Positions 22,047 through 57,477 are shown, numbered from the stretch's first letter. The stretch is DNA of 64,000 nucleotides from Iphione sp. A-MEVVRFRX5 (GCA_976226885.1 OZ320323.1:1550001-1614000), one strand, 5' to 3'. Translations and numbers: made by a program. The notes: a model not told the origin generated them from the letters alone.

Positions 22047-22260
22047 CTACGACCCACTGTTGGCTTGGGCTTGCAAGTCAGTTCTTACCTCCATTGATAG
22101 CCGACCTAATACGTTCTGGCCTACATACGTTCCTTTCCTTCCTATCAGGTGGTTTAGTGACATGTTAGCCCCCCAGTAGTTTGATTTGTTAGCACACACA
22201 ATTTGCCTGTCACCAGTCATGCAGCCAGTTCAAGGTTACTCAAGAACTTTGCTGTTAGCA
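22047..22260 (-). pseudogene. NADAR (YbiA-like) domain C-terminal fragment; missed by the ORF track
   Basis: Hand translation: AKFLSNLELAA/TGDRQIVCANKSNYWGANMSLNHLIGRKGTYVGQNVLGRLSMEVRTDL, matching the AKF..N..L...TG...L....WG....G.N.LG..L.E.R NADAR pattern. Confidence 0.8.
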
Positions 22261-37800: not shown

Positions 37801-38859
37801 GAACATTGAGAACACTAAATGTAATTTTTACAGCTGCCATTATTGGCATGTGAGTATTGCATCCAAGCTCAGGGTAACCGTATAGACTCTACAGTTTAAT
37901 GAATTGATGATACAATATGCTGGCGTGTCCATCACATGATGGACAAATGGGATCTCGTACATAGCTAAGTATGTACTTCCCATCAGTATGGCGCATGCAA
38001 GTAACAAGCATGCTATCGCAGGCTCTTCATTTTATTCCTCCCTGTGTCTCTCTATCAAGAGACAATAAACTTAGGGTTATTGTTTGTACCAGAATACTAC
38101 AAACTTGAGCTAACTTTTCTCGGAGGCATCACGCATTATTCTCAGTTCTCTCTCTACTCTTTATCAAGAGTGTTTTAGGGCTTTTGCATATTATCGGATG
38201 ATCAAGTTTCATGATAGATGCCTAAATGCCCTACGGTTAAGAATTTCCTTATTATCTCTCCTAACTCCTCAACTCCTTTTGAGTTTGGGTGGCATCCATC
38301 GTACAATGTCTTGTACTTAACCACATCCCATCTGTTTGCTCTTTTATGAGTTAGACTCCCTGCTCTGCATGTACTCCTTCCATTTTGGAAGTTTAAGTGT
38401 GTGATATACTCATTGATATGCCAGATGCTGTTATCTAGGATGAACTGCCTTCGACTGATACCATTCATGTTTTGGCCTTGATTATGAAAGATATTGGCCT
38501 TTATTAGGTTAGCACCTAAAATTGTACTAAAGTAGTATGGTATGTCCAATAGGGCTGATTTCAAATAATGGTTGGCATTGTCAAACACACTCATTACTCG
38601 GTTTATTGTTGCACTCATATCTGCTGTTTGCAAATCAATGAACGTATAATATTTACCATTTACAAATTTCCTTGTTTTCTTGGTGATATCACATATTCCC
38701 AGGATTATTATACCCTCTGTATCGTAAAATGTATTTTCAACAACCTCATGTGCCAGTTGTTCAATCGTATAACCAGGAAAAACAAACGGTCACCTCATGA
38801 CTCGAATACTCTCTATTGAGACCTCTCCCTCTTGAGTCACTGTATATATAGTACATCAT
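34806..38859 (-). mobile_element. CR1/L2-group LINE (element C): SGNH ORF 38859-38202, ORF2 APE-RT 37849-~35115
   Basis: SGNH YSDSRG, VFPGY, LGICD, YDGCHP (one frameshift); APE LNVRS, YRPPGG, TGDLN, SDHF; RT GVPQGSLLGP, YADD; A-run at 34806-34819 is a possible tail. Confidence 0.92.
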
Positions 38860-39149
38860 ACATCCGTCAATTTATCAGTCTCTCAGTTACTGTCAATTAG
38901 TATTATATGTTGTACTTCCCTTTCTTGTGCTGAGTTCTTCTTGCTGTTCTGGTATTGGCCACTGCAGTTGTAAGTTAATGGCAAGTTGTAAGTAGTCGGC
39001 CACTTCCACTGGCGTTACTTCTCGAGTACTCGACCCCCGCATCAAATGCCACTGTTAACTTCTCCACTACGTAGGCAACCATTGCTTGCTGTCAGCGGCT
39101 TTCTGCCCTTCATCTCACAATGCTTGCTCTGCAGGCCTGTACGAATATA

Positions 39150-39322
39150 GGACCCCATACTCTGCTATCAAGCTGTTAAGGTTCCTTCCTCCTGAGTCTG
39201 AGATTAGATAATACATATTAAGGTTTCTCTTAGCTTTCTGCACTGCAACCTGCTTCTCCAGATATCTGTTCAGCACGGACCAGATTTGGAATCAGGATCG
39301 CAGCTGTTTCTCATGCCTCCTC
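39150..39322. repeat. ~173-bp direct copy of 39953-40125 (SGNH 5' end)
   Basis: ggaccccatactct...ctcatgcctcctc occurs in both places with a few mismatches. Confidence 0.9.
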
Positions 39323-39361
39323 AGTAGCCTATCGGCTACATTGTTATGAACATTATTTACA

Positions 39362-40019
39362 TCATTCATGCGACCCAGAAATATGATCTACAAACTTTTT
39401 CAGAAGTTCTACAAGTTTCCTTTTCCCAGTATGGCCTTGGTAGCATCCATCCCATAGCTCATTGTACCTGACTTCATCCCGTCCTCCCATCCTCTTGTGT
39501 GTCATTGTCCCAACTCATGGTGTGCTTCTGCCATTGGTATAGTTCTAATTAGTTATATATTCGTTCACATGCCATATTGCATTACTCAGTATGTACTGCT
39601 TCCTACTTAGGTCGTCCATATACAACCCATTATTCAAGTGAATATTATATTTGATCAGATTCATTCCAAAGATCGTTGCAAAATAGAATTCCTTGTCAGG
39701 AATTGCTGAACGCAACAGAGCATTACTCTCATAGTAGTATTCAGGACCCGGTTTACAAGGTCAGACATGTTATCCTCCTTGAGGTCTATCCATGTCCTCC
39801 ATACACCACCTCTCCAGCCTACTTTCTTCTCAGTGAAGTTGCAGATACCTGCCATTATTATCAAACCCTCAACATTGTCTGGGAATACATCGCCTTGTAT
39901 CACATCGGCATATCTTGCACATTGAAACCAGGGTAGTTCCTTGTTACAAGTGGGACCCCATACTCTACTATCAAGCTGTTAAGGTTCCTTCCTCGAGAAT
40001 CTGAGATTAGATAATACAT
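39362..40019 (-). pseudogene. SGNH hydrolase ORF, degenerate
   Basis: YLISDSRGRNL, NYPGF, MAGICN, WDGCY (block V His changed to Tyr). Confidence 0.85.
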
Positions 40020-41029: not shown

Positions 41030-42635
41030 TTATACAAAGTTCAGAGCATCAGACTTTGGCAGATTGGTCAGCGCCTTGAGCCCGTCAGGAAGAGTGTCCA
41101 GGTCGCAATGCCTCTGTAAGCGAGACTCCTTGCGAAGGAATTCTTCCAAGGTCTAGCAGTGAGACCTCTGGAACTTACACCTTTTCTGGTTTTGGTAGTT
41201 CTTGCAGGTTCAAGGCAGCCAATCTGCATCAGCCTATGGATAGCCTTAAATCCATGTAGGTTGACAAGGCTGTCCACCCTATCCATTGTCAACATGTTCA
41301 TCAGTCTTCTGGCACTTAGGAACTCACCCGTCTGTATTGACAGGCACGCACAGTGGTTGACATGCACCTGAAGTTCATACAGAGCAGACTGTTTCAACCC
41401 ATAATAAAGTACAGCCTGGTGGTGTAAATGGCTGGTGTCAGTCAGACACTCAGTGGGAGCAGCCGTTTGGTTCTGCTTATACTTATGGTCGAGGCCCACA
41501 TCCTCTGTTTTAGCTGCTGTAAGCTCTCCTTGAAGCCAAGACAAGCGTCAACTCTGTAGCCCAGCAATGTCAGGCACGTGGCGGAGTCAGGTTGATGCCG
41601 AGGTCAATCCCCTTGGCCTTGGCAAGTGGCATGCACTGGCATTTACCCTTGCTCAAAATAAAGCCATTCCGATGACACCAGGATGCCACCTTAGTTGCCT
41701 GCTAAGCGATCAATCTCAGCTGGAGTAAGTCTCTTGCATGACATATCACTGTCAGGTCATCAGAGTAAAGGGTCCCGGTGGCATTCTGTGGAAGTGATTT
41801 GATAATTCCGTCCACAGCTATGTTGAATGCCACCGGGCCCAAGACAGAGCCTTGGGGTACCCCATATTCCAGATTCCCAAGTCCAGATGAGCCATTGCCA
41901 CAGCATACAAATTGCTGCCGATCTTCAAAGTATCCGCATAGCTGGCGAAGAACTGTCACACTAGCACCATAAGACCTCAGTTTAGACATGATCAGCACAT
42001 GCTGGACTAAGTCAAAAGCTTGTTTTAGGTCATACACCAATATACAGCAGTACTGTCCTTCGTTTAGTCTTTCCAAGGCCTTAATGGTGATTGTTGATAT
42101 CGCAGTTTCTGTGCTGCGACCCGGTGAGAAGCCATGTTGTGACTTCTCAATGACCCCTCTGTGGTACAGGTGCGGCATCATGGCAGATGTGAAACAAGTC
42201 TCCCAGATCTTGCCCGGCAAGATCGAGACTGGTCTATAATTGGCCAGGTCCATTGGGTCGTTCCTTTTGAAGATTGGCGTCATCTGTGCTATTTTCCAAG
42301 CTGACGGGTAGATGGCAGTGTCCCGGATCATCTGAAAGATCCAGCAGAGAAAGTCCAGACAACCGTGCTATTTTCCAAGCTGTGTCCCGGATCATCTGAA
42401 AGATCCAGCAGAGAAAGTCCAGACAACCAAGCAAGATGCCTTTCATCAAATGTGCTGCAACACCATCCACTCCAGAAGCTTTGTTCTGGTTGACTTCTAA
42501 GACAAGTGGTCTTAGATCCAGAGGGGTAGGAACACCTAAACTGAACTTTTTGTCAGCCCAGCTGGATCTCTTTCCTTCAGAGAGGGGGACATTAGGGACC
42601 AGGGCAGACACCGAGTCTACAAAGTAGCTGTGTTC
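41030..42635 (-). mobile_element. 5'-truncated CR1/L2-type LINE ORF2 (RT domain) with an internal ~60-bp duplication at ~42320-42430
   Basis: KASGVDG, WKIAQMTPIFK, NYRPVSIL, QHGF, DLKQAFD, GVPQGSVLGP, YSDD. Confidence 0.92.
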
Positions 42636-42681
42636 TGTATGCCGTGGGACGTTGTTGTCCCTGGGTGCGTGGGACCCGTGG

Positions 42682-43463
42682 CTAGGAGGGGTACTGAAAA
42701 CCCGTTAGTCGTCTGTACTGGGCGCATGACAGGTCTCGGGAGATGGGACCAGCCAACTCTGGTGGTATGGCGACTTGCAGCCTAGCAAAGGGCTGGGCGT
42801 ATGGCGGGTTTCCCTGGTGGGGCAGAGCTGGCCACTCATTGGCATCCTTGGGAGGTGGAGGGGCTCCCTGGGGTGCCATTTCCTGCCTCGGTGGTTGGTT
42901 CTGGTGGGCTTGTTAGGTTGGGGTATTCAGGACGGGGCCTTGGGTTGGGTGGCCTATTTTGGTCTCCTCGGGGGGGAGGGGGGGGGGTCTGGGATAGTGC
43001 TGACCATACAGTGAAACATATTACCGTCCGGCTGGCAATGGGTCAGGAATTCAGTTCGGCGTTCTAGTTACCCCTGGAGGGTGCCCCTTTCCCTGTTTAC
43101 CTGGTCAATGATATGTTCTTTAGAGAATTCAAAGAAGGGGCACCCTGCCTCTTCTAACATAACTCCTATAGTATCAAGAACGCGGACCGCATCCTTGCGA
43201 TCACTGGTGGTGCGACGAATGAGGCCCATGGCGATTGAGTGCTGGACCCCGAAGGCGGAGCTCCTGTGATCATAGTTGATGTCGCGTGCGGTGTCGACAT
43301 CACTGGTGGCATACGGTGGGAGTGATTCTGCGCCGTAACTCCACGGCGTCAGCAGATCCAAGTTATTGAGCGCAAGGAGCCAGTGCACTCGCGTTTCCGC
43401 CTTGGCGCAGTTAACGAGCTGGTTTCTGACCTTTTTCCAAAGGTCTTCAGTGAACGGTGGCAT
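42682..43463 (-). mobile_element. Probable Penelope-like element N-terminal region plus Pro-rich segment
   Basis: LVNCAKAETRVHWLLALNN..YG..PPY resembles LLASMKANVRADWLCHLINEAYG..PTY (9644-9883), which lies in the Penelope remnant. Confidence 0.4.
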
Positions 43464-43524
43464 TGGTATCCTCCCTTCTGGTGCCTGGGCTCCCGCCTGG
43501 CTGTTGTACTTTATTCATACCACA

Positions 43525-46500
43525 ATTTTCAATTTCAATTTCAATGCTTTTATTCACCTCTCACAGTATTGTATAGAATACAGAATAGATCTCCCCGTGA
43601 ACAGTCGACTGAAAATTGAATGAATGACAAGGAAATAGTGCATGTTAGGCAAGCATTAATTGTACTTTTAGTTACAAGCCTTAGGACTGATACATACTCC
43701 TATAGTGTTATCAAAACGATATAACGAGAATATATAAACATACATTTACAATATTGCCATTGGGTTGGTAGACCATCTGGCCTATGCTTAACCCTGTTTG
43801 TGTCCTTGCACATGCTTGGGAATCTTTCACACCATTCCCGACTGGTTACAACAAAACTTTCCTGGCATAAGATATCCTTTGACTCAAAACTTGTTGCAGC
43901 ACCTACCCCTGGTTGGGAGCACATCATTTCATTTTTGTACCTTTTTCAACTTTGATTAAGCATACATACAATATTTTGAGTTATGAATAATTGTCCCTTT
44001 AACATAGGTCTTGAATACCTTTAGAGGCAATGTTGCCTTCCGGGGTATTCTCAATGCATTCCAGGCTTTGGTACCTCGATTCCAGAAAGAGTTAGCATAC
44101 AACCAGTGCTTTGGCCTCGTGACTACTAAGTTATCTGCCAGGCTGTTTCTAGATACCCTCATATGTTTCTTGTGCTGGCAGGCTCCTATTAAGTTCAGTT
44201 TGTGGATCAGCATCAGTAGTTGATGTTGCCCCCGCTCAGAAACTCTCTGCATTGATGCCCGTTTTCTCAGTGAGGTTGCGGACACTCTAGCCTTTGTGCT
44301 GCCTAGCAATACCATCTTGAGAGCATGGTTGAGTTCTATCTGCAAGCTGTCAAGTACCTTTTTGCTGGCATTAAACATGAATGGCAGCCCGTAGTCAAGG
44401 TTGGGAAGAATGAATGCCTTAAACAACAGCTGTCTGTCCTTAAAGTCAACATATTTGATAACCTTGGACAGTCCATAAGCCCTCGATCTGATTTCTTTTT
44501 TGTCACCTCCACCATTTGCCTCCAGTTGAGTTTGGCATCTATGGTGTAACCTAAGAAGTTGCATACATCGACTTTTCTTATATGATCACCTTCGAGCTGT
44601 AAGTCCAGTTCAAATGCATCTGCCTTCCCGAAGCCAATGTAATTGGTCTTCTTTACATTTATCGTCAGGCCGTTCCGGGTGGCCCAACCTACCACATCTT
44701 TTACTCCCCTTTGTAATTTTAGACGGAGAGCCATCATGTTGCTGGCTTCGCTGTAAATAGTTAGGTCATCAGTGTACAAAATACACTGGGTTATTGCTAA
44801 GTTTTGGGGGAGGGTATTCACAACAACAGAAAACAACAGGGGACCAATATGGCTCCCCTGTGGAACACCTTGACGGACAGCTAATGGCTTAGAGTCGACC
44901 CCATTACACCTTACAAATTGTTGTCGGTTACATAGATAGGATCTCATCCATGAAAGGGCTTTATTACCTACGCCTGCTTGTTTCAAACTTTGTATAATTA
45001 GGGAGTGGTTTATGACATCAAAAGCTTTCGATAGGTCGAAACACACTCCTGCCACATACCTACCACTGTCAATTGATGTATACACATCTCGGAGCAGGAC
45101 TGACACAGCAGTTGCTGTACCACGGTATCTCCTAAAACCATGCTGCTCATTACAAAAAAAACCTGAACATTCCAGATAATCAGTCATTTGCTTGTGAACC
45201 AATTTTTCAACTATTTTTCCCATTTGCGGTAAAATTGATACAGGTCGGTAATTGACTTTATCTGATTTTGAACCCTTTTTGTGCAGCGGTTTAACTCGAG
45301 ATTTTTTCCATTCATCAAGGAAAACCCCTTTCATAAGTAGTTCATTCACAATACCAAGGACAAATTCTGATGCGATCAACAGTGAATCTCTCAGTAACTG
45401 CATCGGCACAGTGTCCATCCCACTCGGTTTTGTTGGCTTCACTTCCCTGATTGCTTTTACAAAGTCTAAATGAGAAACTGTTTTGATGTCCCAGGATGAT
45501 GCCTCATTTGCTTCAGTTAGTACCACATGGGTTGTGAGATTCTCTGCCTGGGTGATGAAAAACTCATGCAGCAAGTCTGGTGCTTCACTTGTATCTACCT
45601 GTATACCTGCCTCGACCAGATTTATCTCTGTACTCATAGTGTTGCGAGAGAGAAGACTGGTGTTAATGCAACTCCAGTACTCTCGAGGAGTTCTGCAGCT
45701 CCTTAGCATAGTACAGAAGTATCTCTTCTTGGCCTTTTTTACCAATCTTCGTACCATGTACTTGAAATAATTTGCAATTCTTAGATCATCTACCTGGCCA
45801 TCTGCACGATACTGTTTTAAAAAGTAGTCCCTGTTTTTGACTGTCTCGCGTATTTCATCCGGCATCCACACATTATGACTCTTTTTACGTTTATATTTCC
45901 TGGGGCATAGTGTTTCACTTGCCTCTTCTAAGACAGTCTGGAATTGTTTCCACTTGTCTTCTGCATTGTCTTGTGAAGTGTCCTTGCGGTCCAGGATATT
46001 CTCGTTTAAGATATCTTCAAGAGCCCCCCAGCTATAATTTTTCCAGTTTCTCCCCCAGTAACCATCAGTAGCTGTGCGGTTTCGGGCTTTTTTGTCATTA
46101 AGAAAGACCAGGGCATGATCACTAATATTTAACTCAACAGTTCCTGAGCTGGTGATCGTCCCTATATTTGAGAATATTAGATCAAGTACGGCCCTATTAG
46201 TTTTATGTATGATGGTTGGAGACTTGATGAACTGAGTTAGCTTAAACTTTGAACTCATTTTCTGGATAATATCCCGTCTATTGCTCGCTTTACCCCAATC
46301 TACATTGAAGTCACCACCCAGTACAGTTTCTGTGATCCCTTTCCTTTTGAACTTGCTGAGAGTCGTTTCCAGATATTTCACTAGGGCCTCAATGTCTCCA
46401 CCTGATGGAAAGTACAGAATACTGAAAGCTAAAGGTTTTCTAAATTTAGATCTAAAATTGTACCAATTTGGACATTCAATTCATACCGCAAGCGAGGATT

Positions 46501-48204
46501 TATGGTGTTTAACAGTTTGCCATATATCGGTAGAAAAAGCACCTTATGTGTACCCGGGACATGAAGATTGTGTGATATTTCGTCAAAGTAATTCCAGATG
46601 TCATAATCAAGTGCTAAGTATGTTTCATATACCAAGTTGTTGTTATTCCCATCATTTACGACCAGTGAGTGGATCCTGGTGTGAAATATTGAGAGTTCAT
46701 AGTCAGGACTTGGTACCATAGGCATCATGTTTGTGATGTCTTCTACTGTAATCCCGTAGGTCGATACTATAGTGCACGGACACAGGTTGTCAAATCTGGC
46801 CCTGAGTCCATGTCCAATTGCCAGGCCCCGGTCATCTGTGATGAGCTGTATACGCGGCCACATCCCTATAGGAAATACAGTTTATTTACTACTTTGAACA
46901 CAACTGATGGGTGTTACTCTTGCTCGTCTAAGAATATTAGATCAAGTACGGCCCTACTAGTTTTATGTATGATGGTTGGAGACTTGATGAACTGAGTTAG
47001 CTTAAACTTTGAACTCATTTCTGGAAAATATCCCGTCTATTGCTCACTTTACCCCAATCTACATTGAAGTCACCACCCAGAGCAGTTTCTGTGATCCCTT
47101 TCCTTTTGAACTTGCTGAGAGTCGTTTCCAGATATTTCACTAGGGCCTCAATGTCTCCACCTGGTGGAAAGTACAGAACACCGAAAGCTAAAGGTTTTCG
47201 AAATTTAGATCTTAGTATCAACCACATTGCCTCGATATTGTCATTTACAATATTGTGATCTGGACATTTCTCAGCTACTACTCCCTTTTCTGTATATATC
47301 AATAGACCCCCCCCCCTTAAATCTTTTTGAGCCCTGATCTATCTTGCCTGTATATAGAGTATCCATCTTGGTTTAGATAAGCACTCGGTAATGTAGTACG
47401 TAGCCATGTTTCTACTATCCCACACACTTGCGGTTTGTGATCTCTTAAGAACCAACTTATGTCGTCAATTTTTGGCAATATACTTCTTATGTTCCAGAAC
47501 ACGAATGTCCTCCCCTTCATGATGACAAAGGTCATTTAGCACATTAATTTTAGATTGATTAAGAAAGTTTATCAATGATATTAACATATAGTTATCATTT
47601 TGAAAGTAAGAGAACTTCCCCTTGATATTGACGACAATCCTAAAAAGTGCCTATTTTATGATTCATGTACATATATGACAGAATTAAGCAAACAATCGGT
47701 ACCTTTTATTATGACAGTTTTCTGATTCACAGCCTGGTATAGTTTGATCCGAACATACGCCTGATCAAGATGTTATGCCGTAGCAGAGAGAAATCCACTT
47801 TTACACATGAGCATCATAGTTCAAAATCATTGATGATAAACCTTTCTACTTCGGTTTTCCACATTTCTTGTACTAGCGGAACAACTCCCATGTTCTCACA
47901 GATTAACTCTGGGCGAAATATAGCATTGTTGTCATGCCATTCATGAATTGGGTAACATGTGTCAGGAGTGGGCAGACTATTTTGTTCATTCATAGTTGCG
48001 CATACATTGTTAAATGTACCAATTTGGACATTCAATTCATACTGCAAGCGACTATTTATGGTGTTTAACCGTTTGCCATATATCGGTAGAAAAAGCACCT
48101 TATGTGTACCCGGGACATGAAGATTGTGTGATATTTCGTCAAAGTAATTCCACATGTCATAATCAAGCGCTAAGTATGTTTCATATACCAAGTTGTTGTT
48201 ATTC
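43525..48204 (-). mobile_element. CR1/L2-group LINE (element B), 3' part: SGNH end (48204-47814), APE (47535-46935), duplicated SGNH/APE block, APE-RT (46452-43956), (TTGAAA)n tail
   Basis: WNIRS, VETWL, GGDFN, SDHAL, GVPQGSHIGP, YTDD; AATAAAA followed by ATTGAAATTGAAATTGAAA at 43555-43525. Confidence 0.92.
46455..46930 (-). repeat. Duplicate of 55383-55852 (SGNH 5' part), wedged between two copies of an APE segment (46177-46452 and 46935-47212)
   Basis: Near-identical DNA; both junctions can be read directly. Confidence 0.9.
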
Positions 48205-48743
48205 TTTTTTTTTTTTTTTTATACGTTTGTTTATTTCTGGAATTGGGATAGGCCTTGAGGCCTTACATTTCCAGGCACAACTGAAAGGTTCGACAAGATT
48301 CAGTTACGATGAATCAATAGACACATACACAGTTCATTCCAGGTTGCTAGACGTAGGGTTCTCAGATGAAAGACCACAACGATGCTTTGGATGGCATCTT
48401 GACGAAATGGGTAAGTAATTCAGCAATTTGTGGGGATGTAATAGTAGTGCCAGTGGGTGGTCAGTGGAATAGAGTATGACCAGAAGATGGCTTAATGAGT
48501 GTGATTGCGTGAGCAGAGCTAGATGGTTGCGATTGATGGAGATATGAGCAGATGTGGTGAATATTGCACGATGCCCGTGATAACTCTTCGTTGTTAGAGA
48601 TTTTCAAAAAAGTTATAGGCCTCATGGTGGGTGATGGAATGGAGGGGAACAGATTCCAGTGAGAGGAGTAGTTACAAGTTAGAAGTTTGAAGTTAGAAGG
48701 TCGGGCTACCGTCATGATCGTTATCTGGATATATTTGCGAGCC

Positions 48744-51686
48744 TTAGTGAACCCTCCAATTCTCTTTCATCATTTTCTCAAACATGAGCTTTTTTAGTTT
48801 CGTCTTAGCCGTATTCAGCGACTTCACATTTGGAGGACCACCAGTGGACTTTACAGCTAATGGAAGGGTGTTCCATAAACGGACCTTATTGTACATTGGA
48901 GAGTATTTTATTACTTTTCGTTGTACCCGTACGTTTTTAATGCACTGATTTTTTTGGCTTCTTGTTTCCCTCAATGTCTCTGTTCTAGACTCATCCGGCA
49001 TGTCGTGGATTCTATTGCCAGATTGATTGAATTCCTTTATGGCCATTAATCCTACATAGTAATCGATTCTTAAAGGATACGGAAGAAGTTTTAGTTTCAA
49101 ATAGAGACACTCCATTGGGCTTGTCCAGTCATGGTAGCAGAGTCTTATCAGTCGTTCTAAGAGATTTTGAATATTCCTAAACCCGCATGCTTTCTTGTTT
49201 TGTAGCAATTGACAACCTTGTTCAGAATACGGGATAATGACGGTTTTGAAAATTTGAACTGCTGTTCCAATACTCACCATAGGCCGTGTTATTTTAAATA
49301 ATGTACTCAGTGGCTTTAGTGAGTTCAAGATCTTTCTTATTTGGTCATGCATCGTTAGGTGTTCGTCTAAGTATACTCGTAGATACTTTACACATTTTTG
49401 TCTTTTTATTCCTAACTTTGTTTCTAGGTTTTTGGTTGCTATATATGGCAATTTGTTATGAGGGTTGGAGAAGATGATTAGTTCAGACTTGCTTGCATTG
49501 ATTCTCAGATTGTTTGTAGCACACCAGTCCTGTAGAGTGTTCAGTCCAAGCGTTAATTTGTTAAACAAGTCTTCTACGTCGGTACCAGTCATCACTAGCG
49601 TCGTGTCGTCAGCGTATAGTTGACACTCCTTATCTTTAAAAAGCATTAGTGAATCATTAATATATAACAGAAAAAGCAGGGGCCCCAAGATGCTTCCTTG
49701 GGGTACCCCGGCTTTCACTTCACTTGGGTTTGATATGACTCCATTTAATTTAGTTCGTTGTTTTCTGCCGGATAAATAGTCCTTAATCCAACGGTAATAA
49801 TTACCTAGTCCAAAATTATTTATTTTTTCTAGGATAATACTGTGTTGAATACTATCGAAAGCCTTGGCATAATCGATCAGTAGGACACCAGTCAATTTTT
49901 TCATATTAAAATTTGTATAGACCGTGTCAACCAAGTTTACAATTGCATCGGTTGTTGACTTGCCTTGGCGAAAGCCGAATTGTAATGGATGCAACATCTG
50001 GTTTTGTTCTAGATATAAATAAATCCTCTTATGCACTACCCGTTCAATTACTTTGGAAAAACAAGGAAGAATTGTTATTGGTCTATAGTTTGCCGGGTTT
50101 TTTCGATCTCCCTTCTTAAAGAGTGGTGTCACAATTCCTTCTTTCCAGTCCTTTGGTACAGTTCCCTCTTTAAGTGAACAATTGATTAGCCTGGATACAT
50201 GATCAACTAAGAAAAGTAGTATTTCTTTTAGTATTGGCATAGAACACCATGGCACCCCAGAGGGCTTGCCTATGTCAAAAGCACCTACTATTTCTTTAAT
50301 TTCCTCACTAGAAACAGATGCAACCGATAGGTGATGAGGCAGGTCTGTATTGGTACTTTTAACGTCAACTTTGTGATCAAGGGATTCGGTTTTGTTACTG
50401 GTGGTTCCTTTGTTTGGAAATAAGCCAATGTTCGCAAAAAAGGTATTCATATAATCAGCCGACTCTATATCATTGAGAGCATTACCTTGGGTATCGTTCA
50501 GTTGGATATTCGGTTGAGACAGTTCCTTGGTCCTAAATACTCCTTTTAACATCTTCCAATACTTGTTAGGATTAGAACGGTTTTCGTCCAAATATGATTT
50601 ATAGTAGTTATTTTTGTTTTTACGAATTTGCTGCTTAACCATATTGCTAAATCTCTTGGCCCTCGAGATGTCGCTGGGGATTTTTGTTCTGAGTGATTTT
50701 CTAAATAAATGGTGCTTCTCATTTATTAGTGTCAAAAGTTCACTGGTTAACCAAGGAGCTGTGTATTCCTTACTGCGAACTGGGTGAAGAGGGCTGTAAA
50801 TGTCTAGGGACTGGATAATGACATTTTTTAGTTCCTCCCATAGATATATTGGGTCGCATGAAGAGAAATAATTGGCCCAATTGTATCTGGATAAATATGC
50901 TAAAACATCACCACGTATTTGGGCATTCCATTTTCTAAGCATATGGCGTTTGAACTTGAATTTAAGAGGTTTTGTTAAATTAATAGCCATTTCAATGGCA
51001 TGATGGTCACTTAGATTTAACTGTCAGATACGATATGATATTTCTAGTAAAGTGTTGGCATAGATGTGATCGATTGTGGTTGAAGTTGATTTTGTTTGAC
51101 GAGTTGGTACACCAACTAATTGTGTATAGGAGAATTCCCCTAAGAGAAAAAGAAGATTATTTATAGTCCTGTCACCAGTCGAAGTCCAGTTAATATTTAT
51201 GTCTCCAACGAGTACCATATTAAAGATATTGCTTTTATCTATGTACTCAAATGAGTTACGCAGATGTATAAGGAAGTCATCAGTATTTCCGCTCGGTGGT
51301 CTATAAATTATTCCTAAGTTGATTTTGTCTCCAATCAATAGCTGTAACCATAGCATTTCCACTACACTACTGTTCACATTCAGATGAGAAAGTTCCTGCT
51401 CATCAACTATGATTGCTTGCCTGACATATACGCAGATACCACCCCCTTTCTTAGGTTGATTTTTTCTCGTGCTTACCCATGTACGATCTTGCCTAATTAA
51501 GTAGTAGCCTGGTATATGCATGCTAGCTGTTAATATATTGCCATGGAGCCATGTTTCAACCAGAAAGATAAGGTCAAAATGTTGTTTGTGAACTATAGCT
51601 TGGAACTCTGATAGTTTTCCCACTAAGCTACGGATATTCACGTAAAGTATTCGAAGAGTCGCTTTATATTTGTCGCTACTAGACAT
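48744..51686 (-). CDS. Element A ORF2: AP endonuclease (51686-51024) plus RT (50990-48744), one frameshift
   Basis: VNIRSL, VETWL, YRPPSG, GDIN, TIDH, SDHH; NYRPITIL, QFGF, DYAKAFD, GVPQGSILGP, YADD, WNTLP. Confidence 0.95.
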
Positions 51687-52303
51687 TATAAGATGACATA
51701 CCCGACCATTAAGACCTTATGTGCTAGGAATTTGCAAATCGCATCAGTAATAGGGAGAAAGAGGAAATGGAACAAATGCAATGACTTAAGTGATGATTTT
51801 GATAAAGATAAAGATTGGAAAAACAGAGCCATATCATATATAAGCTGATAAGGCTCGAGAAGGATAGTTAGATACGGACGAGAAATGTTAATGGCCGTCA
51901 TTGGTTTGTGATAGAGAGAATAGGGCATTGGGGAGGGGGGGGGGCGGAGGCATGGTATAGCATTACAATAGTTACGGTTTAATAAAAATTTTAAACTAGA
52001 CTGCTGAAGAGTTACCACGAACACGAATGAATGGCACAGTTCAAACGAACAAACATTTTAATTCAGAATGATAATAAGTACGTTCTATCTATTAGAGAAT
52101 ACATACTTTATGCAAGGGAAATCTATAATATATAATAATATCAAGTTCTGGCTCCGAGATGCATGCCAAGATAATTGTACTGTTCCATGAAGATCAACAT
52201 GGTACTGAAGAGCTTTTATATCGGTACTGTATGAACTTCGGTATCAAAAAATGCATATGAGTGCTTAGTGTAATATAAACAGTTCAGTGTAATATAAACA
52301 GTC

Positions 52304-52993
52304 TCATATTGAGCATTTAGTCAAAAATTTGACTAATTCTCGCGTCCTTTCCCAGCGCCACTCGTCCTTGAGGTGACAACCATCCCTCGTCTTGTAGAAA
52401 CGGTGATGATAGTGCTTGTTGTTCCTGCTGTGAACCACACTGCCGACCCATGGGGTCGACATATCACGCTTGGCGTTCATAGCAGTAATATCTGCGTTCA
52501 GACGAATGATCGCATCATTTAGAAGAGACTGTCGTGAGTCGTTTACGTCTGGATTAATGTCAGTATTTCCCAGATGGGAATTATACTGGCTCAGGTTTGG
52601 AGCGGTGAAGGTGCAGAATGCAAATTTGCTGTCCTCAAAGCGCTTCTTCAGAGTTGTCTCTGCTTTTGCCAATTGCCATCGTACGTGATAATATAATTCA
52701 TCAAATGACTCATCAGCCAACTCAATTTGGCGGATGGAACTACCATTGGCTAGTCGCACATTGTAGATCATCCTTGTCAAGTCGTTTGTACCCGCGAGGA
52801 CCATGACAAGGGCAGGTTCCGCTCTGTAGTCAAAGTACACAGCTTTGTCAACGACTTCAAGTAATTTATAACCAGGGTAGAAGTGGACGTTTACAAAGTA
52901 GTCTTCCTTCCAGAGGTCGTAGCCAATGCCACGACCATTGGAGTCGGCAAATAAGAAAACATTGCTGTGCAGATCACAAACTTCTCTATTCAT
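52304..52993 (-). CDS. Element A free-standing SGNH/GDSL-type hydrolase (likely start 52993, 7 nt after the NADAR stop)
   Basis: FADSNG (block I Ser), YPG (block II), AGTND (block III), DGCH (block V): complete catalytic set, intact frame. Confidence 0.9.
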   Translation of the reverse strand: MNREVCDLHSNVFLFADSNGRGIGYDLWKEDYFVNVHFYPGYKLLEVVDKAVYFDYRAEPALVMVLAGTNDLTRMIYNVRLANGSSIRQIELADESFDELYYHVRWQLAKAETTLKKRFEDSKFAFCTFTAPNLSQYNSHLGNTDINPDVNDSRQSLLNDAIIRLNADITAMNAKRDMSTPWVGSVVHSRNNKHYHHRFYKTRDGCHLKDEWRWERTRELVKFLTKCSI

Positions 52994-53000
52994 TTTTGTA

Positions 53001-53609
53001 TTAGAGTCTTGCAGAATGTGTGTTGTCTGGTCTTGGTTGTGCTCGCAAATGTGAGCGCAGTTCAATTAACAGGAGACCCAATTGGTTTTTGCCATTGTAT
53101 GTGCCGGATTGGATTAGATGGGAGCAGAATGGGGCACCCGCCCCCCAGAAACTATCGTTACTGGCCTCGATTAACATGGACTCGCCGGTGTCAAGTAGTT
53201 TGGATTTTAGGGTGTCATTCTGAGTGATCTTTGCTTCGATTAGTTCCTTCATACAGGTTACACGGTCTGCTTCCCATGCTTCATCCATTAGAATTTGCTT
53301 TGTTCTAGCCTTCGCTTTGAATGGGTCATTCAGTAGTAACAACTCGTTAACCAGATTGTTCAGACCCACGCGCTTTGCCTTTGCCACGGCAAAAGCTTGT
53401 TCAATGCTAGTAAAGGCCATTCTTTCCCAAACAAAGCTACATGTGTATGTATTAGAAAGAGGATGATGTTTCCCGTTAAAGGCTAGCATGGTGTTCGATT
53501 TCTGCTCCGATGCCTTTTCTAGGGAGTATTCACTTGGCAGTTTATGCAGGTTATGGGCAGTGTATGATTGCCCATTTATTGTTAGCTTGTCATTTTCTAG
53601 TTTAGCCAT
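53001..53609 (-). CDS. Element A ORF1 C-terminus: CTD plus NADAR (YbiA-like) domain
   Basis: AFNG..HPLSN.Y..F..IEQAF..AKA..W...M..LIEAKITQN..LKSKLLDTG..LIEASNDSFWGAG..GKNQLGLLLIELR is a canonical NADAR signature with Glu and Asp before WG. Confidence 0.92.
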   Translation of the reverse strand: MAKLENDKLTINGQSYTAHNLHKLPSEYSLEKASEQKSNTMLAFNGKHHPLSNTYTCSFVWERMAFTSIEQAFAVAKAKRVGLNNLVNELLLLNDPFKAKARTKQILMDEAWEADRVTCMKELIEAKITQNDTLKSKLLDTGESMLIEASNDSFWGAGAPFCSHLIQSGTYNGKNQLGLLLIELRSHLRAQPRPDNTHSARL

Positions 53610-55060
53610 AGCACCACAAGCGCGGGCACAGTCCTTAATTCACTGCGCTTGGACCTATCATCGAAGGATAGATCATCATTTATCCAGATGCCAGGATGTT
53701 GTTTTAGTTTTGTTTTATTTCTTAGAATCTCATTTTTCCACGATATCTTTAGAAAACTTACTAGAACATCTCTGTGTTTACCAGGGCGTTTTTGACCTAG
53801 CCGGATGCATTGGTCCAGTTCGTAGGGTTGCATAGATGGACATAACAACTGAGTAATGCTTAGGACTTTGGACATTGTAGTGACAGGAGTTTCAAGCTCA
53901 TCTTCGAAAATGCCCGATATGATCACATTGTGTTTGCGAAGGATTCGGTCATGTTTTTTGTTGTCATTCTCAAGATGAGATACTGTCTCTTTTGTAATAT
54001 TTTGTTCACATCTTAGGTTCCCTTGCTCACCTTTCAACGCAGCTATTTCTGCCTTTAATTGGGCGACCTCGTCCTTACATGCGCACGACTGGGCTTTTTT
54101 AGTTAGTTCATTGTCAACCAATTCCTTTAGGGCGTTGATTTCTTTTGCATTAGTGGAGGCCTGTGATCTTATCTCCTCGACTAATTTTGTTGTTTTGTCA
54201 CTGTTTTTATTTATTGCTTTTGTCCACTCAGCTACCTCTTGAGCAAGTTTCTCGTTTTTGGCCGTGTTTGCATTGATTGATTGGGTCATTATTGTAAGGA
54301 TAGCTGCTATGGTACTAATGTCTTGAATGAGGTTATGCAAGTTGTTGACCCCATATGACAATTGACCTTGATTTAGATTCGGCAATGGGCTGGGCGTAAT
54401 CGATGTACCCGTCGTACCTGTACATTGTAAATTTCTTGATGCTACTACTTGAGTAACGTCATCAGTAAACTCAACCTGCTTGACGATATTATCATTGACA
54501 GTTTCATTCTGTTCATCCTTGTTTTTCTTGCTATGCTCTGGCAATGATGGGGAGTCACCTTTACGTTTACCACTTGCCAATATCTCAAATGAGTTACCGG
54601 CATTGCCTAGAGTTTTCAATAAATGATTTTCAGTTATGCGTTTGAGAGAGTCAGGTGTCGTTACTGGGTTAAGTCGATTGCTGTCTGGAGTTACCATGAT
54701 TTTTTCCGTTTCTGCGTCAACCTGCGAGCGAACAATTTCGATGCTATCGTTGGGGCTATCTTCAGATACTCTAGTTGGTAGATTATCACTAGGTTCTGGT
54801 GTTTTGGGCTTGTCTGTACTGTCAGACATGGTGTTATTTTGTGTTACTGTAGTGACAGTTTGACTAGCTGCTGGCACATTTCCTGCCTTTGTAACAATAT
54901 TGATACTGTTAATTTTAAAGTGAAGCGAGTCTTCAGAGGGAAGTTTTACTTTCTCAATATTTATGCTGTCGTTGACCATGGGTGCTAAGTGAGTGTCTAA
55001 AATTAGATCAGTCAGCGGCACCGGTTGTCCTACTGCACGTTCACCCATATTGTCGCTCAC
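53597..55060 (-). CDS. Element A ORF1 N-terminal 487 aa: disordered region, long coiled coil, RRM, start of CTD
   Basis: Heptads EVAQLKAEIAALKGEQ; RKHNVIISGI..IRLG..RDVLVSF..GIWINDDL is the L1-ORF1p/transposase_22-type RRM; frameshift at ELRTV leads into the NADAR frame. Confidence 0.9.
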   Translation of the reverse strand: MSDNMGERAVGQPVPLTDLILDTHLAPMVNDSINIEKVKLPSEDSLHFKINSINIVTKAGNVPAASQTVTTVTQNNTMSDSTDKPKTPEPSDNLPTRVSEDSPNDSIEIVRSQVDAETEKIMVTPDSNRLNPVTTPDSLKRITENHLLKTLGNAGNSFEILASGKRKGDSPSLPEHSKKNKDEQNETVNDNIVKQVEFTDDVTQVVASRNLQCTGTTGTSITPSPLPNLNQGQLSYGVNNLHNLIQDISTIAAILTIMTQSINANTAKNEKLAQEVAEWTKAINKNSDKTTKLVEEIRSQASTNAKEINALKELVDNELTKKAQSCACKDEVAQLKAEIAALKGEQGNLRCEQNITKETVSHLENDNKKHDRILRKHNVIISGIFEDELETPVTTMSKVLSITQLLCPSMQPYELDQCIRLGQKRPGKHRDVLVSFLKISWKNEILRNKTKLKQHPGIWINDDLSFDDRSKRSELRTVPALVVLWLN

Positions 55061-55277
55061 GCCACTAGCCGTCAGAAGAAAACTTAAATTTACTCAAATG
55101 AGAAAACACAAGACAGCCAAAAAACCTCTGTAGTATGTTCTTAAATAAGAATCATCTACTTACAAATTCCGTTTGCTCAGTTTGGTCACCTTACTTCCAT
55201 ATAAAGTCGACACGTTCGCCTCCGCCCCCGATAGCACGTCCTTACTCACCAGCGACCATACTCTCAAGAGAGAAATA

Positions 55278-55572
55278 TGGGCGAAATATAGCATTGTTGT
55301 CATGCCATTCATGAATTGGGTAACATGTGTCAGGAGTGGGCAGACCGTTTTGTTCATTCATAGCTGCGCATACATTGTTAAATGTACCAATTTGGACATT
55401 CAATTCATACTGCAAGTGAGGATTTATGGTGTTTAACCGTTTGCCATATATCGGTAGAAAAAGCACCTTATGTGTACCCGGGACATGAAGATTGTGTGAT
55501 ATTTTGTCAAAGTAATTCCACATGTCATAATCAAGCGCTAAGTATGTTTCATATACCAAGTTGTTGTTATTC
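55278..55572. repeat. 295-bp direct repeat flanking element A (partner at 47910-48204)
   Basis: tgggcgaaatatagc...gttgttgttattc at both ends, same length, a handful of substitutions. Confidence 0.93.
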
Positions 55573-55786
55573 CCATCATTTACGACCAGTGAGTGGATCC
55601 CTGTGTGAAATATTGTGAGTTCATAGTCAGGACTTGGTACCATAGGCATCATGTTTGTGATGTCTTCTACTGTAATCCCGTAGGTCGATACTATAGTGCA
55701 CGGACACAGATTGTCAAATCTGGCCCTGAGTCCATGTCCAATTGCCAGGCCCGGTCATCTGTGATGAGCTGTATACGCGGCCACAT
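55278..55786 (-). pseudogene. Element B SGNH-like ORF, 5' part (continues at 48204-47814); catalytic motifs altered
   Basis: LITDDR(G) at block I, HTGIHS at block III, ENMGVVP in place of DGCH; position equivalent to the SGNH ORF of element A. Confidence 0.7.
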
Positions 55787-55938
55787 CCCTATAGGAAATA
55801 CAGTTTATTTACTACTTTGAACACAACTGATGGGTGTTACTCTTGCTCGTCCAGGGTCATTGCCTTGTACTCATAACATGAAGAATGTCAGGCAAGTAGA
55901 TACACACTACAACATGTTTACAAATATGTATCACATTG

Positions 55939-56431
55939 TTATGCAACAATTATCGGATCAGAACTTTTGTTTCCACGCAGATCGTTGCGTACGTTACACA
56001 GTGCTTTACCAGTCATGTTCCTCCCAACATAATCCCCTTTGCTCAGTTCTTTGTCGAAGAGTCGAGTAGCACAACCAAAGAACTTATCCAATGACCCCTT
56101 CAAAATAGTTTTTTTTACCTGTTTTCAAAAGAACGTCCAAAAGGTCTGGATGTTGGGTAAACTTCGCTCTGTGTATGTCGTACAGACACTTAGTTTCTTC
56201 ACCCGACCACTCCTCTGTAGAGGTTATCGACTCACCAAGTTGTCTAGCCTTGTGTGGACAGACTGCACTCCGGATTTCCCTAGTGAGTTCGTCGTTACCT
56301 ATAGCCTGCGCCCGGGCACATTGAAAGGCGTGCTCCACCGTGGGGTACTTGTTTCCATTGTATTCCACCTCCACGTTGTTTGTACTATCACTTTTTGATA
56401 CAATAATTCCGCTACGATAGTATGCTATCAC
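55939..56431 (-). pseudogene. NADAR domain (element B, proximal copy), one frameshift
   Basis: YNGNKYPTVEHAFQCARA..KARQLG..W..HRAKFTQHPDLLDVLLKTG..FEG/SLDKFFG..GRNMTGKALCNVRNDL. Confidence 0.9.
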
Positions 56432-56778: not shown

Positions 56779-57256
56779 TCAATTTATGTCTGCTGCTTCT
56801 GCCTCCTCGTCCTCCTCCTCATTGGGGAATAGATCGTCCCTCAGCTCAGTTAGTGAGCGGCCTAGCATGTTTTTCCCCTTGAAATATGATCCTTTTTTAA
56901 CGAAGTGACCAAACCCGCTCGCCACTCCCCAATACGTTGATTTACTTGCAGATATTAACTCTCGTCTTTCCGTTTTGCCTAGTGCATCCTTCAAGTTTGG
57001 CAGGCCAGTAAATTTTGCCATTAGGATGTCTGTCATTATGCCTATTCGGGCTTTGTCCCAGTGCTGCCTACCTGTACCCTCTTGCCGATCGCTGTCAGTT
57101 CCTCGGGGTCTGTAGTGGCTAATATCTCAGTCTTAGCCCTCTCGTCTTCTGCATGGACTGCTCTCTCCAATTGGAAAGCCTTTTCACGACCGTTCCTTTG
57201 TATGTGAAGGCAGAAATATACAGGTTGCTAAAACTTGCCTCCGTTCCTTGAAATAC
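56779..57256 (-). pseudogene. NADAR domain (distal copy), frameshifted
   Basis: VFQG..FSNLY..F.YKG; HWDKARIGIMTDILMAKF..L..T..ELISASKSTYWG..FKGKNMLGRSLTELR. Confidence 0.85.
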
Positions 57257-57477
57257 TACTATGATTCGATACTGAACAACAGTCAGTATGGAATTGTTGA
57301 TGTCAGCTACCACCACTCTGTTGACCGATCACGACCCCCACTCATCTCCCTATGTTATCCTCAGCTCTAAAGCATACATTATGCACAGATACACAGACAT
57401 ATTCATAACTGGTCGTCAAATTGTCTCATAGATTATAAACTCTCCTTGCCATTATTCCATTGGGAAATACGATCATA

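What the first reader, a model, noticed from the sequence alone, without database searches (positions are those of the whole stretch)
48205..55277. Three-ORF LINE carrying an ORF1p-fused NADAR (ADP-ribose N-glycosidase) domain and a separate SGNH esterase
Seen: one poly(A)-tailed unit encodes coiled coil-RRM-CTD-NADAR, then (TAA-TACAAAA-ATG) an SGNH ORF with intact Ser and DxxH motifs, then APE-RT; the NADAR keeps E-x3-D-x2-WG. Established: esterase domains occur in CR1/L2 ORF1p, usually fused to it; NADAR/YbiA enzymes hydrolyse N-glycosidic bonds, including removing ADP-ribose from guanine in DNA (DarT1 antitoxin), and animals have guanine ADP-ribosyltransferases (pierisin, clam CARP-1). I know of no description of NADAR as a LINE ORF1 domain, but could not search. 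Inference: the RNP brings its own de-ADP-ribosylase to protect RNA or the TPRT cDNA from host ADP-ribosylation, a retrotransposon counter-defence.
Basis: partly seen in the sequence, partly recalled or inferred. Interest (0 to 1): 0.9.

Follow-up and report, generated by a model that had tools for sequence, protein, structure and literature searches.

The report
Three-gene LINE carrying NADAR and esterase
This is a slightly decayed full-length copy of a very abundant invertebrate jumping gene (LINE) that has three genes: its L1-like RNA-binding protein ends in a NADAR enzyme (which removes ADP-ribose from DNA/RNA bases), and a separate small esterase gene sits before the copying enzyme. The design is real and conserved, but why it carries these enzymes is untested.

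Summary
Window 48205-55277 (minus strand) is one LINE insertion with a poly(A) tail and an unusually long 295-bp target-site duplication. It encodes three units:
- an L1-type ORF1 (coiled coil, RRM, CTD) followed by a NADAR domain (Pfam E=1.4e-24);
- a free-standing 229-aa SGNH esterase ORF;
- APE-RT.

This copy is damaged. A frameshift near 53640 separates ORF1 from NADAR, and a copy-specific TGA at 51026-51024 interrupts ORF2. Intact copies of two sister families elsewhere in the genome show the true design: ORF1-NADAR as one 695-700-aa protein, a separate esterase ORF, then a 963-969-aa ORF2.

The genome holds thousands of NADAR and esterase candidates of this kind. At least 143 public protein clusters share the ORF1-NADAR fusion. 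NADAR active-site residues are almost invariant, and both extra modules are under purifying selection.

A 2025 paper (PMC12477816) notes YbiA-type NADAR domains in ORF1 of oyster LINEs. I found no description of the three-ORF layout. The counter-defence idea remains an untested inference, and I found no candidate host ADP-ribosyltransferase. The scan has already flagged the same design on other DNA of this genome (23 notes).

The parts
55278..55572 (.). Upstream copy of the 295-bp target-site duplication. It is part of a tandem repeat with a period of about 1553 bp.
   Evidence: 97.6% identical to 47910-48204 and abuts the LINE 5' end. In the uninterrupted array (L035) this segment occurs once per unit.
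55049..55277 (-). 5' UTR of the element
   Evidence: Lies between the TSD boundary and the first ATG of ORF1 at 55048.
53597..55048 (-). ORF1, L1-type: disordered N-terminus, long coiled coil, RRM and CTD. In this copy a frameshift near 53650-53620 makes it end prematurely at the stop 53599-53597.
   Evidence: ORF listed. The family profile A2 hits human L1 ORF1p 2ykp/2yko at E=3e-14. The AF2 model of the L031 orthologue has pLDDT 91, and Foldseek matches 2yko with TM 0.69. Frameshift located.
53001..53639 (-). NADAR domain (YbiA type), including the TAA stop at 53003-53001. In intact relatives it is the C-terminal domain of ORF1p.
   Evidence: Pfam PF08719 E=1.4e-24. PDB matches YbiA 2b3w and P. 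nicotianae NADAR 8bau. The catalytic E, K, E, D and W positions are present.
52304..52993 (-). Free-standing SGNH (GDSL) esterase ORF, 229 aa, intact
   Evidence: S/G/N/H blocks are invariant in 7 copies from two organisms. VIA-align gives Z 10.7 to GDSL hydrolases. The best PDB profile hit is the ZfL2-1 LINE esterase 4c1b at E=0.02. Pfam is below threshold, E=0.024.
51717..52303 (-). Non-coding AT-rich spacer between the esterase ORF and ORF2
   Evidence: No nucleotide or translated similarity between the spacers of four elements. Spacer length is 500-1300 nt.
48744..51716 (-). ORF2: APE endonuclease, then reverse transcriptase and a C-terminal domain. It is interrupted by one TGA at 51026-51024.
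   Evidence: Pfam Exo_endo_phos E=3.8e-10 and RVT_1 E=3.8e-39. The stop is CGA in the sibling copy. The intact homologues are 963-969 aa.
48221..48743 (-). 3' UTR. It includes a 45-nt motif (48274-48230) that is conserved across divergent families and ends in AATAAA.
   Evidence: 23 invariant columns in 13 elements. A two-helix fold is possible, but covariation is not significant.
48205..48220 (-). Poly(A) tail (16 A)
   Evidence: Read directly from the sequence.
47910..48204 (.). Downstream copy of the 295-bp target-site duplication

Best explanation
Window 48205-55277(-) is a full-length, mildly decayed insertion of an APE-type non-LTR retrotransposon from a large, old, tricistronic lineage.

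Shown:
- ORF1p is an L1-type coiled-coil/RRM/CTD RNA-binding protein whose C-terminus is a YbiA-type NADAR domain with a complete active site.
- A second, separately translated small ORF encodes an SGNH esterase related to the esterases of CR1/L2 ORF1 proteins.
- ORF2 is APE-RT.
- The element inserted by target-primed reverse transcription: it has a poly(A) tail and a TSD, and its sibling lies at a different site.

Inferred:
- The NADAR is an active N-glycosidase, carried on the element's RNP by ORF1p. It acts on nucleic acid in that RNP, most plausibly removing ADP-ribose from guanine or cytosine bases of the LINE RNA or nascent cDNA.
- The esterase acts like the ZfL2-1 esterase, in lipid or membrane-linked RNP handling.
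- The esterase ORF is reached by termination-reinitiation. The gaps between stop and start are 7, 12, 55 and 99 nt, or an ATGA overlap.
For: Anatomy and boundaries.

Intact relatives with the same order:
- L031 has ORF1-NADAR of 700 aa, an esterase ORF of 229 aa and an ORF2 of 969 aa.
- L033 and L037, with 695-, 255- and 963-aa open frames, show the same order.

Abundance in this genome:
- 4416 NADAR candidates; all 150 scored have E<1e-23, mostly in 450-700-aa open frames.
- 2341 esterase candidates; the 150 scored are 25-74% identical, nearly all in 226-315-aa open frames, so the esterase is always a separate ORF.
- 14 NADAR/esterase pairs, 46-153 nt apart, occur in both top lists.

Outside this genome:
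- 143 representative proteins at E<=1e-30 align in one stretch across RRM/CTD plus NADAR.
- Three-ORF copies occur in run ERR14368249.
- Two-ORF copies without an esterase occur in ERZ26222911.

Folds: for ORF1-NADAR; for the esterase.

Active site and co-inheritance:
- Among 71 fusion proteins the catalytic positions are E 71/71, K or R 66/71, W 71/71 and E 70/71. They were mapped on 8bau residues E43, K50 and E125.
- Pairwise identities in RRM-CTD and in NADAR correlate at r=0.65, with 0 of 2000 permutations reaching that value.

Selection: pN is about 0.23 against pS of 0.85-0.93 for NADAR, the esterase and the ORF1 core alike.
Against: - No enzyme activity, substrate or expression was tested. 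No sequencing run was listed for this stretch.
- The esterase does not reach Pfam's threshold, and its C-terminal third, which holds the DGCH block, is poorly modelled.
- This copy cannot make the fusion protein or a full ORF2. Its own subfamily has only one other copy, which is truncated.
- No pierisin/toxin-type ADP-ribosyltransferase was found in the genome with two Pfam models, so the proposed substrate has no known source here.
- Related lineages do without the esterase, so it is not essential to the design.
Confidence: 0.7

Rival explanations
1. The NADAR domain works in RNA processing or metabolism of the element's own transcript, for example on NAD-derived or ADP-ribose-linked RNA ends or other N-glycosidic adducts. 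It is not countering a host defence.
For: This is the role proposed for NADAR in RNA viruses and suggested for the oyster and Ectocarpus retroelements in PMC12477816. Invertebrate nidoviruses insert NADAR next to RNA-modifying domains such as methyltransferases. No host base-ADP-ribosyltransferase was found here.
Against: The only demonstrated nucleic-acid activities of NADARs, including YbiA-type and animal ones, are removal of ADP-ribose from guanine and cytosine bases. No RNA-end activity is documented in the papers I read.
Confidence: 0.2
2. The NADAR and esterase modules are evolutionary baggage: captured host genes that the element carries without needing them, or that are catalytically dead in practice.
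For: Related elements lack the esterase altogether. The literature reports that L2 retrotransposition does not depend on esterase activity (citing Kajikawa 2012).
Against: Synonymous sites are saturated while pN is only about 0.23 in both modules, the same as in the ORF1 core. Catalytic residues are invariant or nearly so across 71 fusion proteins and 7 esterases. The LINE NADARs are only 28-31% identical to the genome's cellular NADAR but 43-64% identical to each other. This points to an old acquisition that has been maintained.
Confidence: 0.07
3. The three-ORF appearance is an artefact: the esterase is really part of one ORF1 polyprotein, produced by stop-codon readthrough or a sequencing or mutational stop.
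For: In L031 and L033 the esterase is in the same frame as ORF1-NADAR, separated by a single TAG and 12 nt.
Against: In the window copy and in L042 the two ORFs are in different frames (a 7-nt spacer and an ATGA overlap). L037 has two stops between them. Nearly all of 150 genomic esterase hits sit in open frames of only 226-315 aa.
Confidence: 0.03

Closest known systems
Crassostrea gigas LINE families in Repbase (filed as Tx1) whose ORF1 holds a YbiA-type NADAR domain, noted in PMC12477816
   Same: A NADAR domain sits inside the ORF1 protein of an invertebrate LINE. The authors also suggest a role on the RNA intermediate.
   Different: That paper gives one passing paragraph and mentions neither a separate esterase ORF nor an L1-type RRM/CTD core. 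The RT here is no closer to L1 than to R2, which does not fit a Tx1/L1-group element. I could not compare sequences with the Repbase entries.
Esterase-type ORF1p of CR1/L2 LINEs (ZfL2-1, PDB 4c1b; Kapitonov & Jurka 2003; Schneider et al. 2013)
   Same: An SGNH esterase with an intact triad is encoded upstream of APE-RT. 4c1b is the best PDB profile hit of the esterase ORF. The structural neighbours (TAP, PAF-AH) are the same ones reported for ZfL2-1.
   Different: In CR1/L2 the esterase is fused to a coiled coil and IS the ORF1p, a class that lacks RNA-binding domains. Here it is a free-standing second ORF behind an L1-type RNA-binding ORF1p. This element ends in poly(A), which among CR1-group elements is reported only for Zenon.
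Human/mouse LINE-1 ORF1p (PDB 2yko, 2ykp, 2ldy, 2w7a)
   Same: Coiled coil, RRM and CTD occur in the same order. Profile E=3e-14 and Foldseek TM 0.69.
   Different: L1 ORF1p ends after the CTD, whereas here a 160-aa NADAR enzyme follows. Pfam Transposase_22 is not detected in this copy and is detected in only 1 of 71 relatives.
Ectocarpus Gypsy LTR retrotransposons with NADAR at the N-terminus of Pol (PMC12477816)
   Same: A retroelement independently carries a YbiA-type NADAR.
   Different: A different element class (LTR), a different position (Pol rather than the Gag/ORF1 analogue), and an apparently bacterial origin.
NADAR and macrodomain insertions in invertebrate nidovirus polyproteins (PMC11848433, PMC12377751)
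   Same: RNA-based genetic parasites of invertebrates, including oysters, repeatedly acquire ADP-ribose-processing domains.
   Different: These are viral replicase polyproteins, not a chaperone protein of a genomic retrotransposon. Their function is also unknown.
DarTG1 toxin-antitoxin NADAR (Schuller et al. 2023)
   Same: The same fold and the conserved E and K that bind the distal ribose and the phosphates. Eukaryotic and YbiA-type NADARs also remove ADP-ribose from guanine and cytosine.
   Different: The antitoxin clade uses an aspartate in place of the YbiA-family glutamate. The LINE domain has the glutamate (YbiA type), and there is no partner transferase gene in the element.

Membership tests
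APE-type non-LTR retrotransposon (LINE) | ORF2 with an N-terminal apurinic-like endonuclease followed by a reverse transcriptase | tested here: met
   Exo_endo_phos E=3.8e-10 and RVT_1 E=3.8e-39. Intact 963-969-aa ORF2s in L031 and L037.
APE-type non-LTR retrotransposon (LINE) | Insertion signature: 3' poly(A) or tail, target-site duplication, 5'-truncated siblings at other sites | tested here: met
   A 16-nt poly(A) after AATAAA. A 295-bp TSD. The sibling copy is 5'-truncated inside NADAR and has a different 3' flank.
L1-type (type II) ORF1p | Coiled coil, then RRM, then CTD | tested here: met
   Profile against PDB: 2ykp/2yko E=3e-14, 2ldy 2e-8, 2w7a 3.5e-6. AF2 pLDDT 91 with a helix at 14-148 followed by alpha/beta domains. 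Foldseek matches 2yko with TM 0.69 and rmsd 3.2.
L1-type (type II) ORF1p | Match to Pfam Transposase_22 (PF02994) | tested here: inconclusive
   No hit for the window ORF1 at E<=0.1. 1 of 71 relatives hits at E=7e-6.
NADAR superfamily, YbiA family (PF08719) | Pfam match above the gathering score | tested here: met
   87.6 bits against a 35.1-bit cut-off for the window copy. 71 of 71 relatives match.
NADAR superfamily, YbiA family (PF08719) | Active-site residues: Glu and Lys of the E-x6-K motif (E43 and K50 in P. nicotianae) and the YbiA-family Glu (E125) before D-x2-WG | tested here: met
   The window has 'SIEQAFAVAK' and 'IEASNDSFWGAG'. Alignment to 8bau and 2b3w; residue roles; conservation counts.
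NADAR superfamily, YbiA family (PF08719) | N-glycosidase / de-ADP-ribosylase activity | not testable with these tools
   Needs a biochemical assay.
DarT1-associated (BC4488-type) NADAR antitoxins | Catalytic Asp replacing the YbiA Glu, and an adjacent DarT1 gene | tested here: not met
   The Glu is retained in 70 of 71 relatives (definition). The element has no transferase ORF.
SGNH/GDSL hydrolases | Four conserved blocks with Ser, Gly, Asn and Asp-x-x-His | tested here: met
   DS.G, G, G.N and DG.H are invariant in 7 sequences from two organisms.
SGNH/GDSL hydrolases | Pfam GDSL family match above the gathering score | tested here: not met
   Lipase_GDSL 15.2 bits against 23.6. The best relative gives Lipase_GDSL_2 22.8 bits against 32.9.
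SGNH/GDSL hydrolases | Flavodoxin-like SGNH fold | tested here: met
   AF2 pLDDT 69. The top 50 Foldseek hits are all SGNH hydrolases. VIA-align gives Z 10.7, with 95 chains at Z>=8. The C-terminal 50 residues are not modelled with confidence.
Retrotransposon esterases of CR1/L2 ORF1p | Specific sequence relationship to the ZfL2-1/CR1 esterase | tested here: inconclusive
   4c1b is the top hit among 177,635 PDB sequences, but only at E=0.02 and 17.6 bits.
L1/Tx1 group of LINEs | RT clearly closer to L1-group RTs than to other clades | tested here: not met
   The RT region scores 4.6e-14 to R2 and 8e-14 to human L1 ORF2p, so it is equidistant.
L1/Tx1 group of LINEs | Sequence-specific insertion (a hallmark of Tx1; from my own knowledge) | tested here: not met
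   The two copies of this subfamily have unrelated flanks.
CR1 group of LINEs (CR1, L2, Daphne, Crack, Zenon...) | Placement in an RT phylogeny with Repbase/Dfam references | not testable with these tools
   No labelled reference RTs were available. The esterase link and a C-terminal '...FSP...WN.MP.EIK' motif recall CR1/L2. The motif rests on my memory only.

The most novel reading that the evidence does not exclude
The NADAR on ORF1p is a retrotransposon counter-defence. In this reading, lophotrochozoan hosts (molluscs, annelids) would mark foreign or retroelement RNA/cDNA bases with ADP-ribose using a transferase that has not been recognised. These LINEs, like the NADAR- and macrodomain-bearing nidoviruses of the same hosts, would carry the eraser on their RNP. 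That would reveal a new branch of animal nucleic-acid immunity.
Probability: 0.2. Interest if true: 0.9.

Novelty: new variant of a known kind. Interest (0 to 1): 0.55.

Why it matters
LINE ORF1 proteins are thought of as RNA chaperones or, in CR1/L2, as esterases. This lineage combines both classes in one element and adds a nucleic-acid de-ADP-ribosylase domain to the chaperone.

The design is kept under selection in thousands of copies and in several invertebrate assemblies. That makes it a tractable system for two questions:
- whether base ADP-ribosylation of RNA or DNA exists as a regulatory or defensive mark in animals;
- what the long-puzzling LINE esterase does when it is uncoupled from ORF1p.

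For genome annotation, it explains thousands of stray 'NADAR' and 'GDSL-like' gene models in mollusc and annelid assemblies as transposon genes.

Tried and rejected
- Chance capture in one copy: rejected.
- Single polyprotein by readthrough: rejected, because the frames differ between families.
- A fourth coding region or conserved element between the esterase and ORF2: none. The spacers share no similarity.
- Word-index protein searches (search for homologous proteins):
  - the NADAR region gave only 2 hits;
  - ORF2 gave nothing above 30% identity and no useful names;
  - the esterase ORF gave nothing.
- Exact look-up of the intact proteins and of the cellular NADAR, to name the organism: not in the collection.
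- Atlas search of ORF2 for a clade name: uninformative.
- APE domain against PDB sequences: no hit.
- Expression: no sequencing run was listed.
- Host ADP-ribosyltransferases: PF01375 and PF03496 found nothing in the genome. The controls did not ring either, so this is inconclusive.
- 3' motif as a structured RNA: 97% of cells can pair, but only one pair covaries, which is not above the shuffled controls. I report it as a conserved sequence, not a proven structure.
Only a weak ORF1 tblastn match at 31587-30997 was seen. Left unresolved.

Full report
**What is there**

On the minus strand of window 48205-55277 lies one 7073-nt unit. Read 5' to 3' it contains:
- a 5' UTR of about 230 nt;
- an ORF1 frame, 55093-53600, with its first ATG at 55048;
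- a NADAR frame, 53639-53004;
- TAA, a 7-nt spacer and an ATG at 52993 that opens a 229-aa ORF ending at 52304;
- a 587-nt spacer;
- an APE-RT frame, 51716-48747;
- a 3' UTR with AATAAA and a 16-nt poly(A) at 48220-48205.

Pfam confirms three of the domains: NADAR (E=1.4e-24), Exo_endo_phos (3.8e-10) and RVT_1 (3.8e-39). The small ORF gets only a sub-threshold GDSL hit (E=0.024).

**Boundaries**

The 295 nt directly upstream of the 5' end (55572-55278) recur directly after the poly(A) (48204-47910) at 97.6% identity. The flanks belong to a tandem repeat of about 1553-bp period, which is also present 70 kb away (L035). In that array the duplicated segment occurs once per unit and runs straight into the downstream sequence. 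The duplication is therefore tied to the insertion: it is an unusually long target-site duplication.

The only close relative (98%) lies at C26:2.32-2.33 Mb. It is 5'-truncated inside NADAR, interrupted by another LINE, and has an unrelated 3' flank. It is thus an independent retrotransposition event.

**State of this copy**

ORF1 and NADAR are in different frames. The shift lies at about 53650-53620, between residues that align with one continuous stretch in the L031 protein. ORF2 has one TGA at 51026-51024, where the sibling has CGA. The esterase ORF is intact. I built no consensus and repaired no frame; natural intact relatives answered the frame question.

**Intact relatives show the design**

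Sister families at 40-66% protein identity carry the same order without lesions.
- L031 (C11) has a 700-aa ORF1-NADAR protein, a TAG plus 12 nt, a 229-aa esterase ORF, a 757-nt spacer and a 969-aa ORF2.
- L033 (C1) is the same except for a broken ORF2.
- L037 (C4) has open frames of 695, 255 and 963 aa.

Genome-wide scans give the scale.
- The Pfam NADAR model finds 4416 first-look candidates. All 150 that were scored have E<1e-23, and most lie in 450-700-aa open frames.
- The esterase query finds 2341 candidates. The 150 scored are 25-74% identical to the query and almost all lie in 226-315-aa open frames.
- The esterase is therefore a separate gene throughout the lineage. Fourteen NADAR/esterase pairs, 46-153 nt apart, appear in both truncated lists.
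- The best NADAR hit (176 bits, C22) is a single-exon cellular NADAR. It is only 28-31% identical to the LINE domains, which are 43-64% identical to each other.

**Outside this genome**

A full HMMER scan of 1.84 billion representatives with the 700-aa protein gives 143 hits at E<=1e-30. Nearly all are 300-780 aa long and align in one stretch across RRM/CTD plus NADAR.

Genomic context was read for six of them.
- In run ERR14368249, two contigs show ORF1-NADAR followed by an SGNH-like ORF and then APE. One junction is an ATGA overlap. A third contig ends within the start of an SGNH-like ORF.
- In assembly ERZ26222911, two families have ORF1-NADAR followed directly by ORF2, with no esterase and a poly(A) tail.

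ESM-Atlas look-alikes are molluscan and annelid where taxa are recorded. The top representative is a 4240-aa Haliotis rufescens protein with seven NADAR repeats. I could not name the host organism of the window.

**Domain identities**

- ORF1-NADAR. A profile of 71 fusion proteins hits NADAR structures (8bau 1e-34, 2b3w 2e-28) and human L1 ORF1p (2ykp/2yko 3e-14; also 2ldy, 2w7a, 6fia). The AF2 model of L031 residues 240-700 has pLDDT 91. It shows a 135-residue helix, then RRM, CTD and NADAR. Foldseek returns 8bau, 2b3w and the L1 ORF1p trimer (TM 0.69-0.73).
- NADAR active site. In P. nicotianae NADAR, E43, K50 and E125 (plus D130 and W133) bind ADP-ribose, and mutants at the equivalent positions of E. 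coli C7 NADAR lose guanine de-ADP-ribosylation. The equivalent residues are present in the window copy. Across the 71 proteins they are E 71/71, K or R 66/71, E 70/71, D 54/71 and W 67/71. The glutamate marks the YbiA family, not the DarT1-antitoxin clade.
- Esterase. The S, G, N and D-x-x-H blocks are invariant in seven sequences from two organisms. The AF2 model (pLDDT 69) matches only SGNH hydrolases, with VIA Z up to 10.7. The best PDB profile hit is the ZfL2-1 LINE esterase 4c1b, weakly (E=0.02).

**Selection and history**

Between the window copy and L031, synonymous sites are saturated (pS 0.85-0.93). Non-synonymous divergence is 0.21-0.23 in NADAR, in the esterase and in the ORF1 core alike. 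Pairwise identities in RRM-CTD and in NADAR are correlated (r=0.65; 0 of 2000 permutations). This fits one old fusion inherited together rather than repeated captures.

**Clade**

- The RT is equidistant from human L1 ORF2p and R2 proteins (about 1e-13 each).
- No conserved Cys/His knuckle is visible at the ORF2 C-terminus.
- The two copies of this subfamily are not site-specific.

These points argue against the L1/Tx1 group, under which the oyster relatives are filed in Repbase according to PMC12477816. The esterase link and a C-terminal motif recall the CR1/L2 group. However, poly(A) tails are reported there only for Zenon. Without reference RTs the clade stays open.

**How it probably works**

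Shown: the coding capacity, the insertion signature, the conservation and the intact active sites.

Inferred:
- ORF1p coats the LINE RNA as L1 ORF1p does, so it holds the NADAR enzyme on the RNP.
- The documented nucleic-acid activity of NADARs, including YbiA-type and sponge enzymes, is removal of ADP-ribose from guanine and cytosine in DNA and RNA. The most economical reading is that it cleans such adducts from the element's RNA or cDNA.
Two transferase Pfam scans were empty and inconclusive.
- The short or overlapping junctions suggest that the esterase ORF is reached by termination-reinitiation. How ORF2 is reached across a non-conserved 0.5-1.3-kb spacer is open.

**Novelty**

Full-text searches link NADAR/YbiA with retrotransposons in one paper only. 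That paper already notes NADAR in oyster LINE ORF1s and in Ectocarpus Gypsy elements. Esterases in LINE ORF1s have been known since 2003, and free-standing GDSL ORFs are known in rotifer LTR elements. Invertebrate nidoviruses also carry NADAR.

I did not find three things described:
- the tricistronic layout;
- the L1-type chaperone with a C-terminal NADAR;
- the scale of the lineage.

This scan has flagged the same design 23 times in this genome, so this window adds one decayed copy with clean ends rather than a first sighting.

Noticed in passing
window 47910-48204 and 55278-55572: The target-site duplication is 295 bp, far longer than the usual 5-20 bp of APE-type LINEs. Its two copies differ at 7 positions (2.4%), similar to the 2.3% between this copy and its sibling.
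   Followed up: partly
window 46171-48204 and 55278-55900; L035 1-4400 (C26:1676000-1680400): The LINE sits in a tandem repeat of about 1553-bp period that is itself built from fragments of an older LINE (APE pieces at 46166-47505). One unit in the window carries a deletion of about 790 bp.
   Followed up: partly
window 48230-48274 (-); also L008, L013-L017, L021-L025, L029: A 45-nt 3'-terminal motif (CTGGA..TGTAAGGCC-loop-GGCCT..TCCAG..AATAAA) is nearly invariant in 13 elements whose coding DNA is only about 65% identical. It can form two nested helices, but covariation is not significant. It may be the RT recognition site. Many short genomic hits match only this tail, which suggests very short truncated copies or SINEs.
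   Followed up: partly
window 56084-56431 (-) and 56779-57316 (-): Two decayed NADAR fragments lie just upstream of the element (Pfam E=7e-17 and 6e-11). They are 25-37% identical to LINE NADARs and stand in the wrong order for a single gene. They are remnants of other NADAR-bearing elements.
   Followed up: partly
window 22062-22217 (-): Another short NADAR-like fragment (tblastn E=1e-6) lies near an RT remnant at 19005-19621.
   Followed up: no
L038 2276-2911 (-) = G000:C22:27636275-27636910: An apparently single-exon cellular NADAR gene (212 aa). It is the best Pfam NADAR hit in the genome (176 bits) and is only 28-31% identical to the LINE domains.
   Followed up: partly
P0070 (Haliotis rufescens XP_048255699.1): A 4240-aa abalone protein model contains seven NADAR stretches in a repeat of about 642 aa. 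P0100 (1580 aa) and P0172 (2914 aa) also hold several NADARs. These could be a host multi-NADAR protein or a gene model that joins transposon ORFs.
   Followed up: no
L039-L041 and L043 (ENA ERZ26222911): Two-ORF relatives: ORF1-NADAR (428-438 aa) followed after about 370-400 nt by ORF2 (964-1042 aa), with no esterase. One family is present as at least three places encoding the same ORF1-NADAR protein with the same gene layout, which suggests recent activity in that organism.
   Followed up: partly
window 35707-39730 (-) and 41630-45952 (-): Further LINE remnants (RT, APE and weak esterase-like matches at 38235-38780 and 39395-39730) show that the window is a nest of related and unrelated LINEs.
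   Followed up: no
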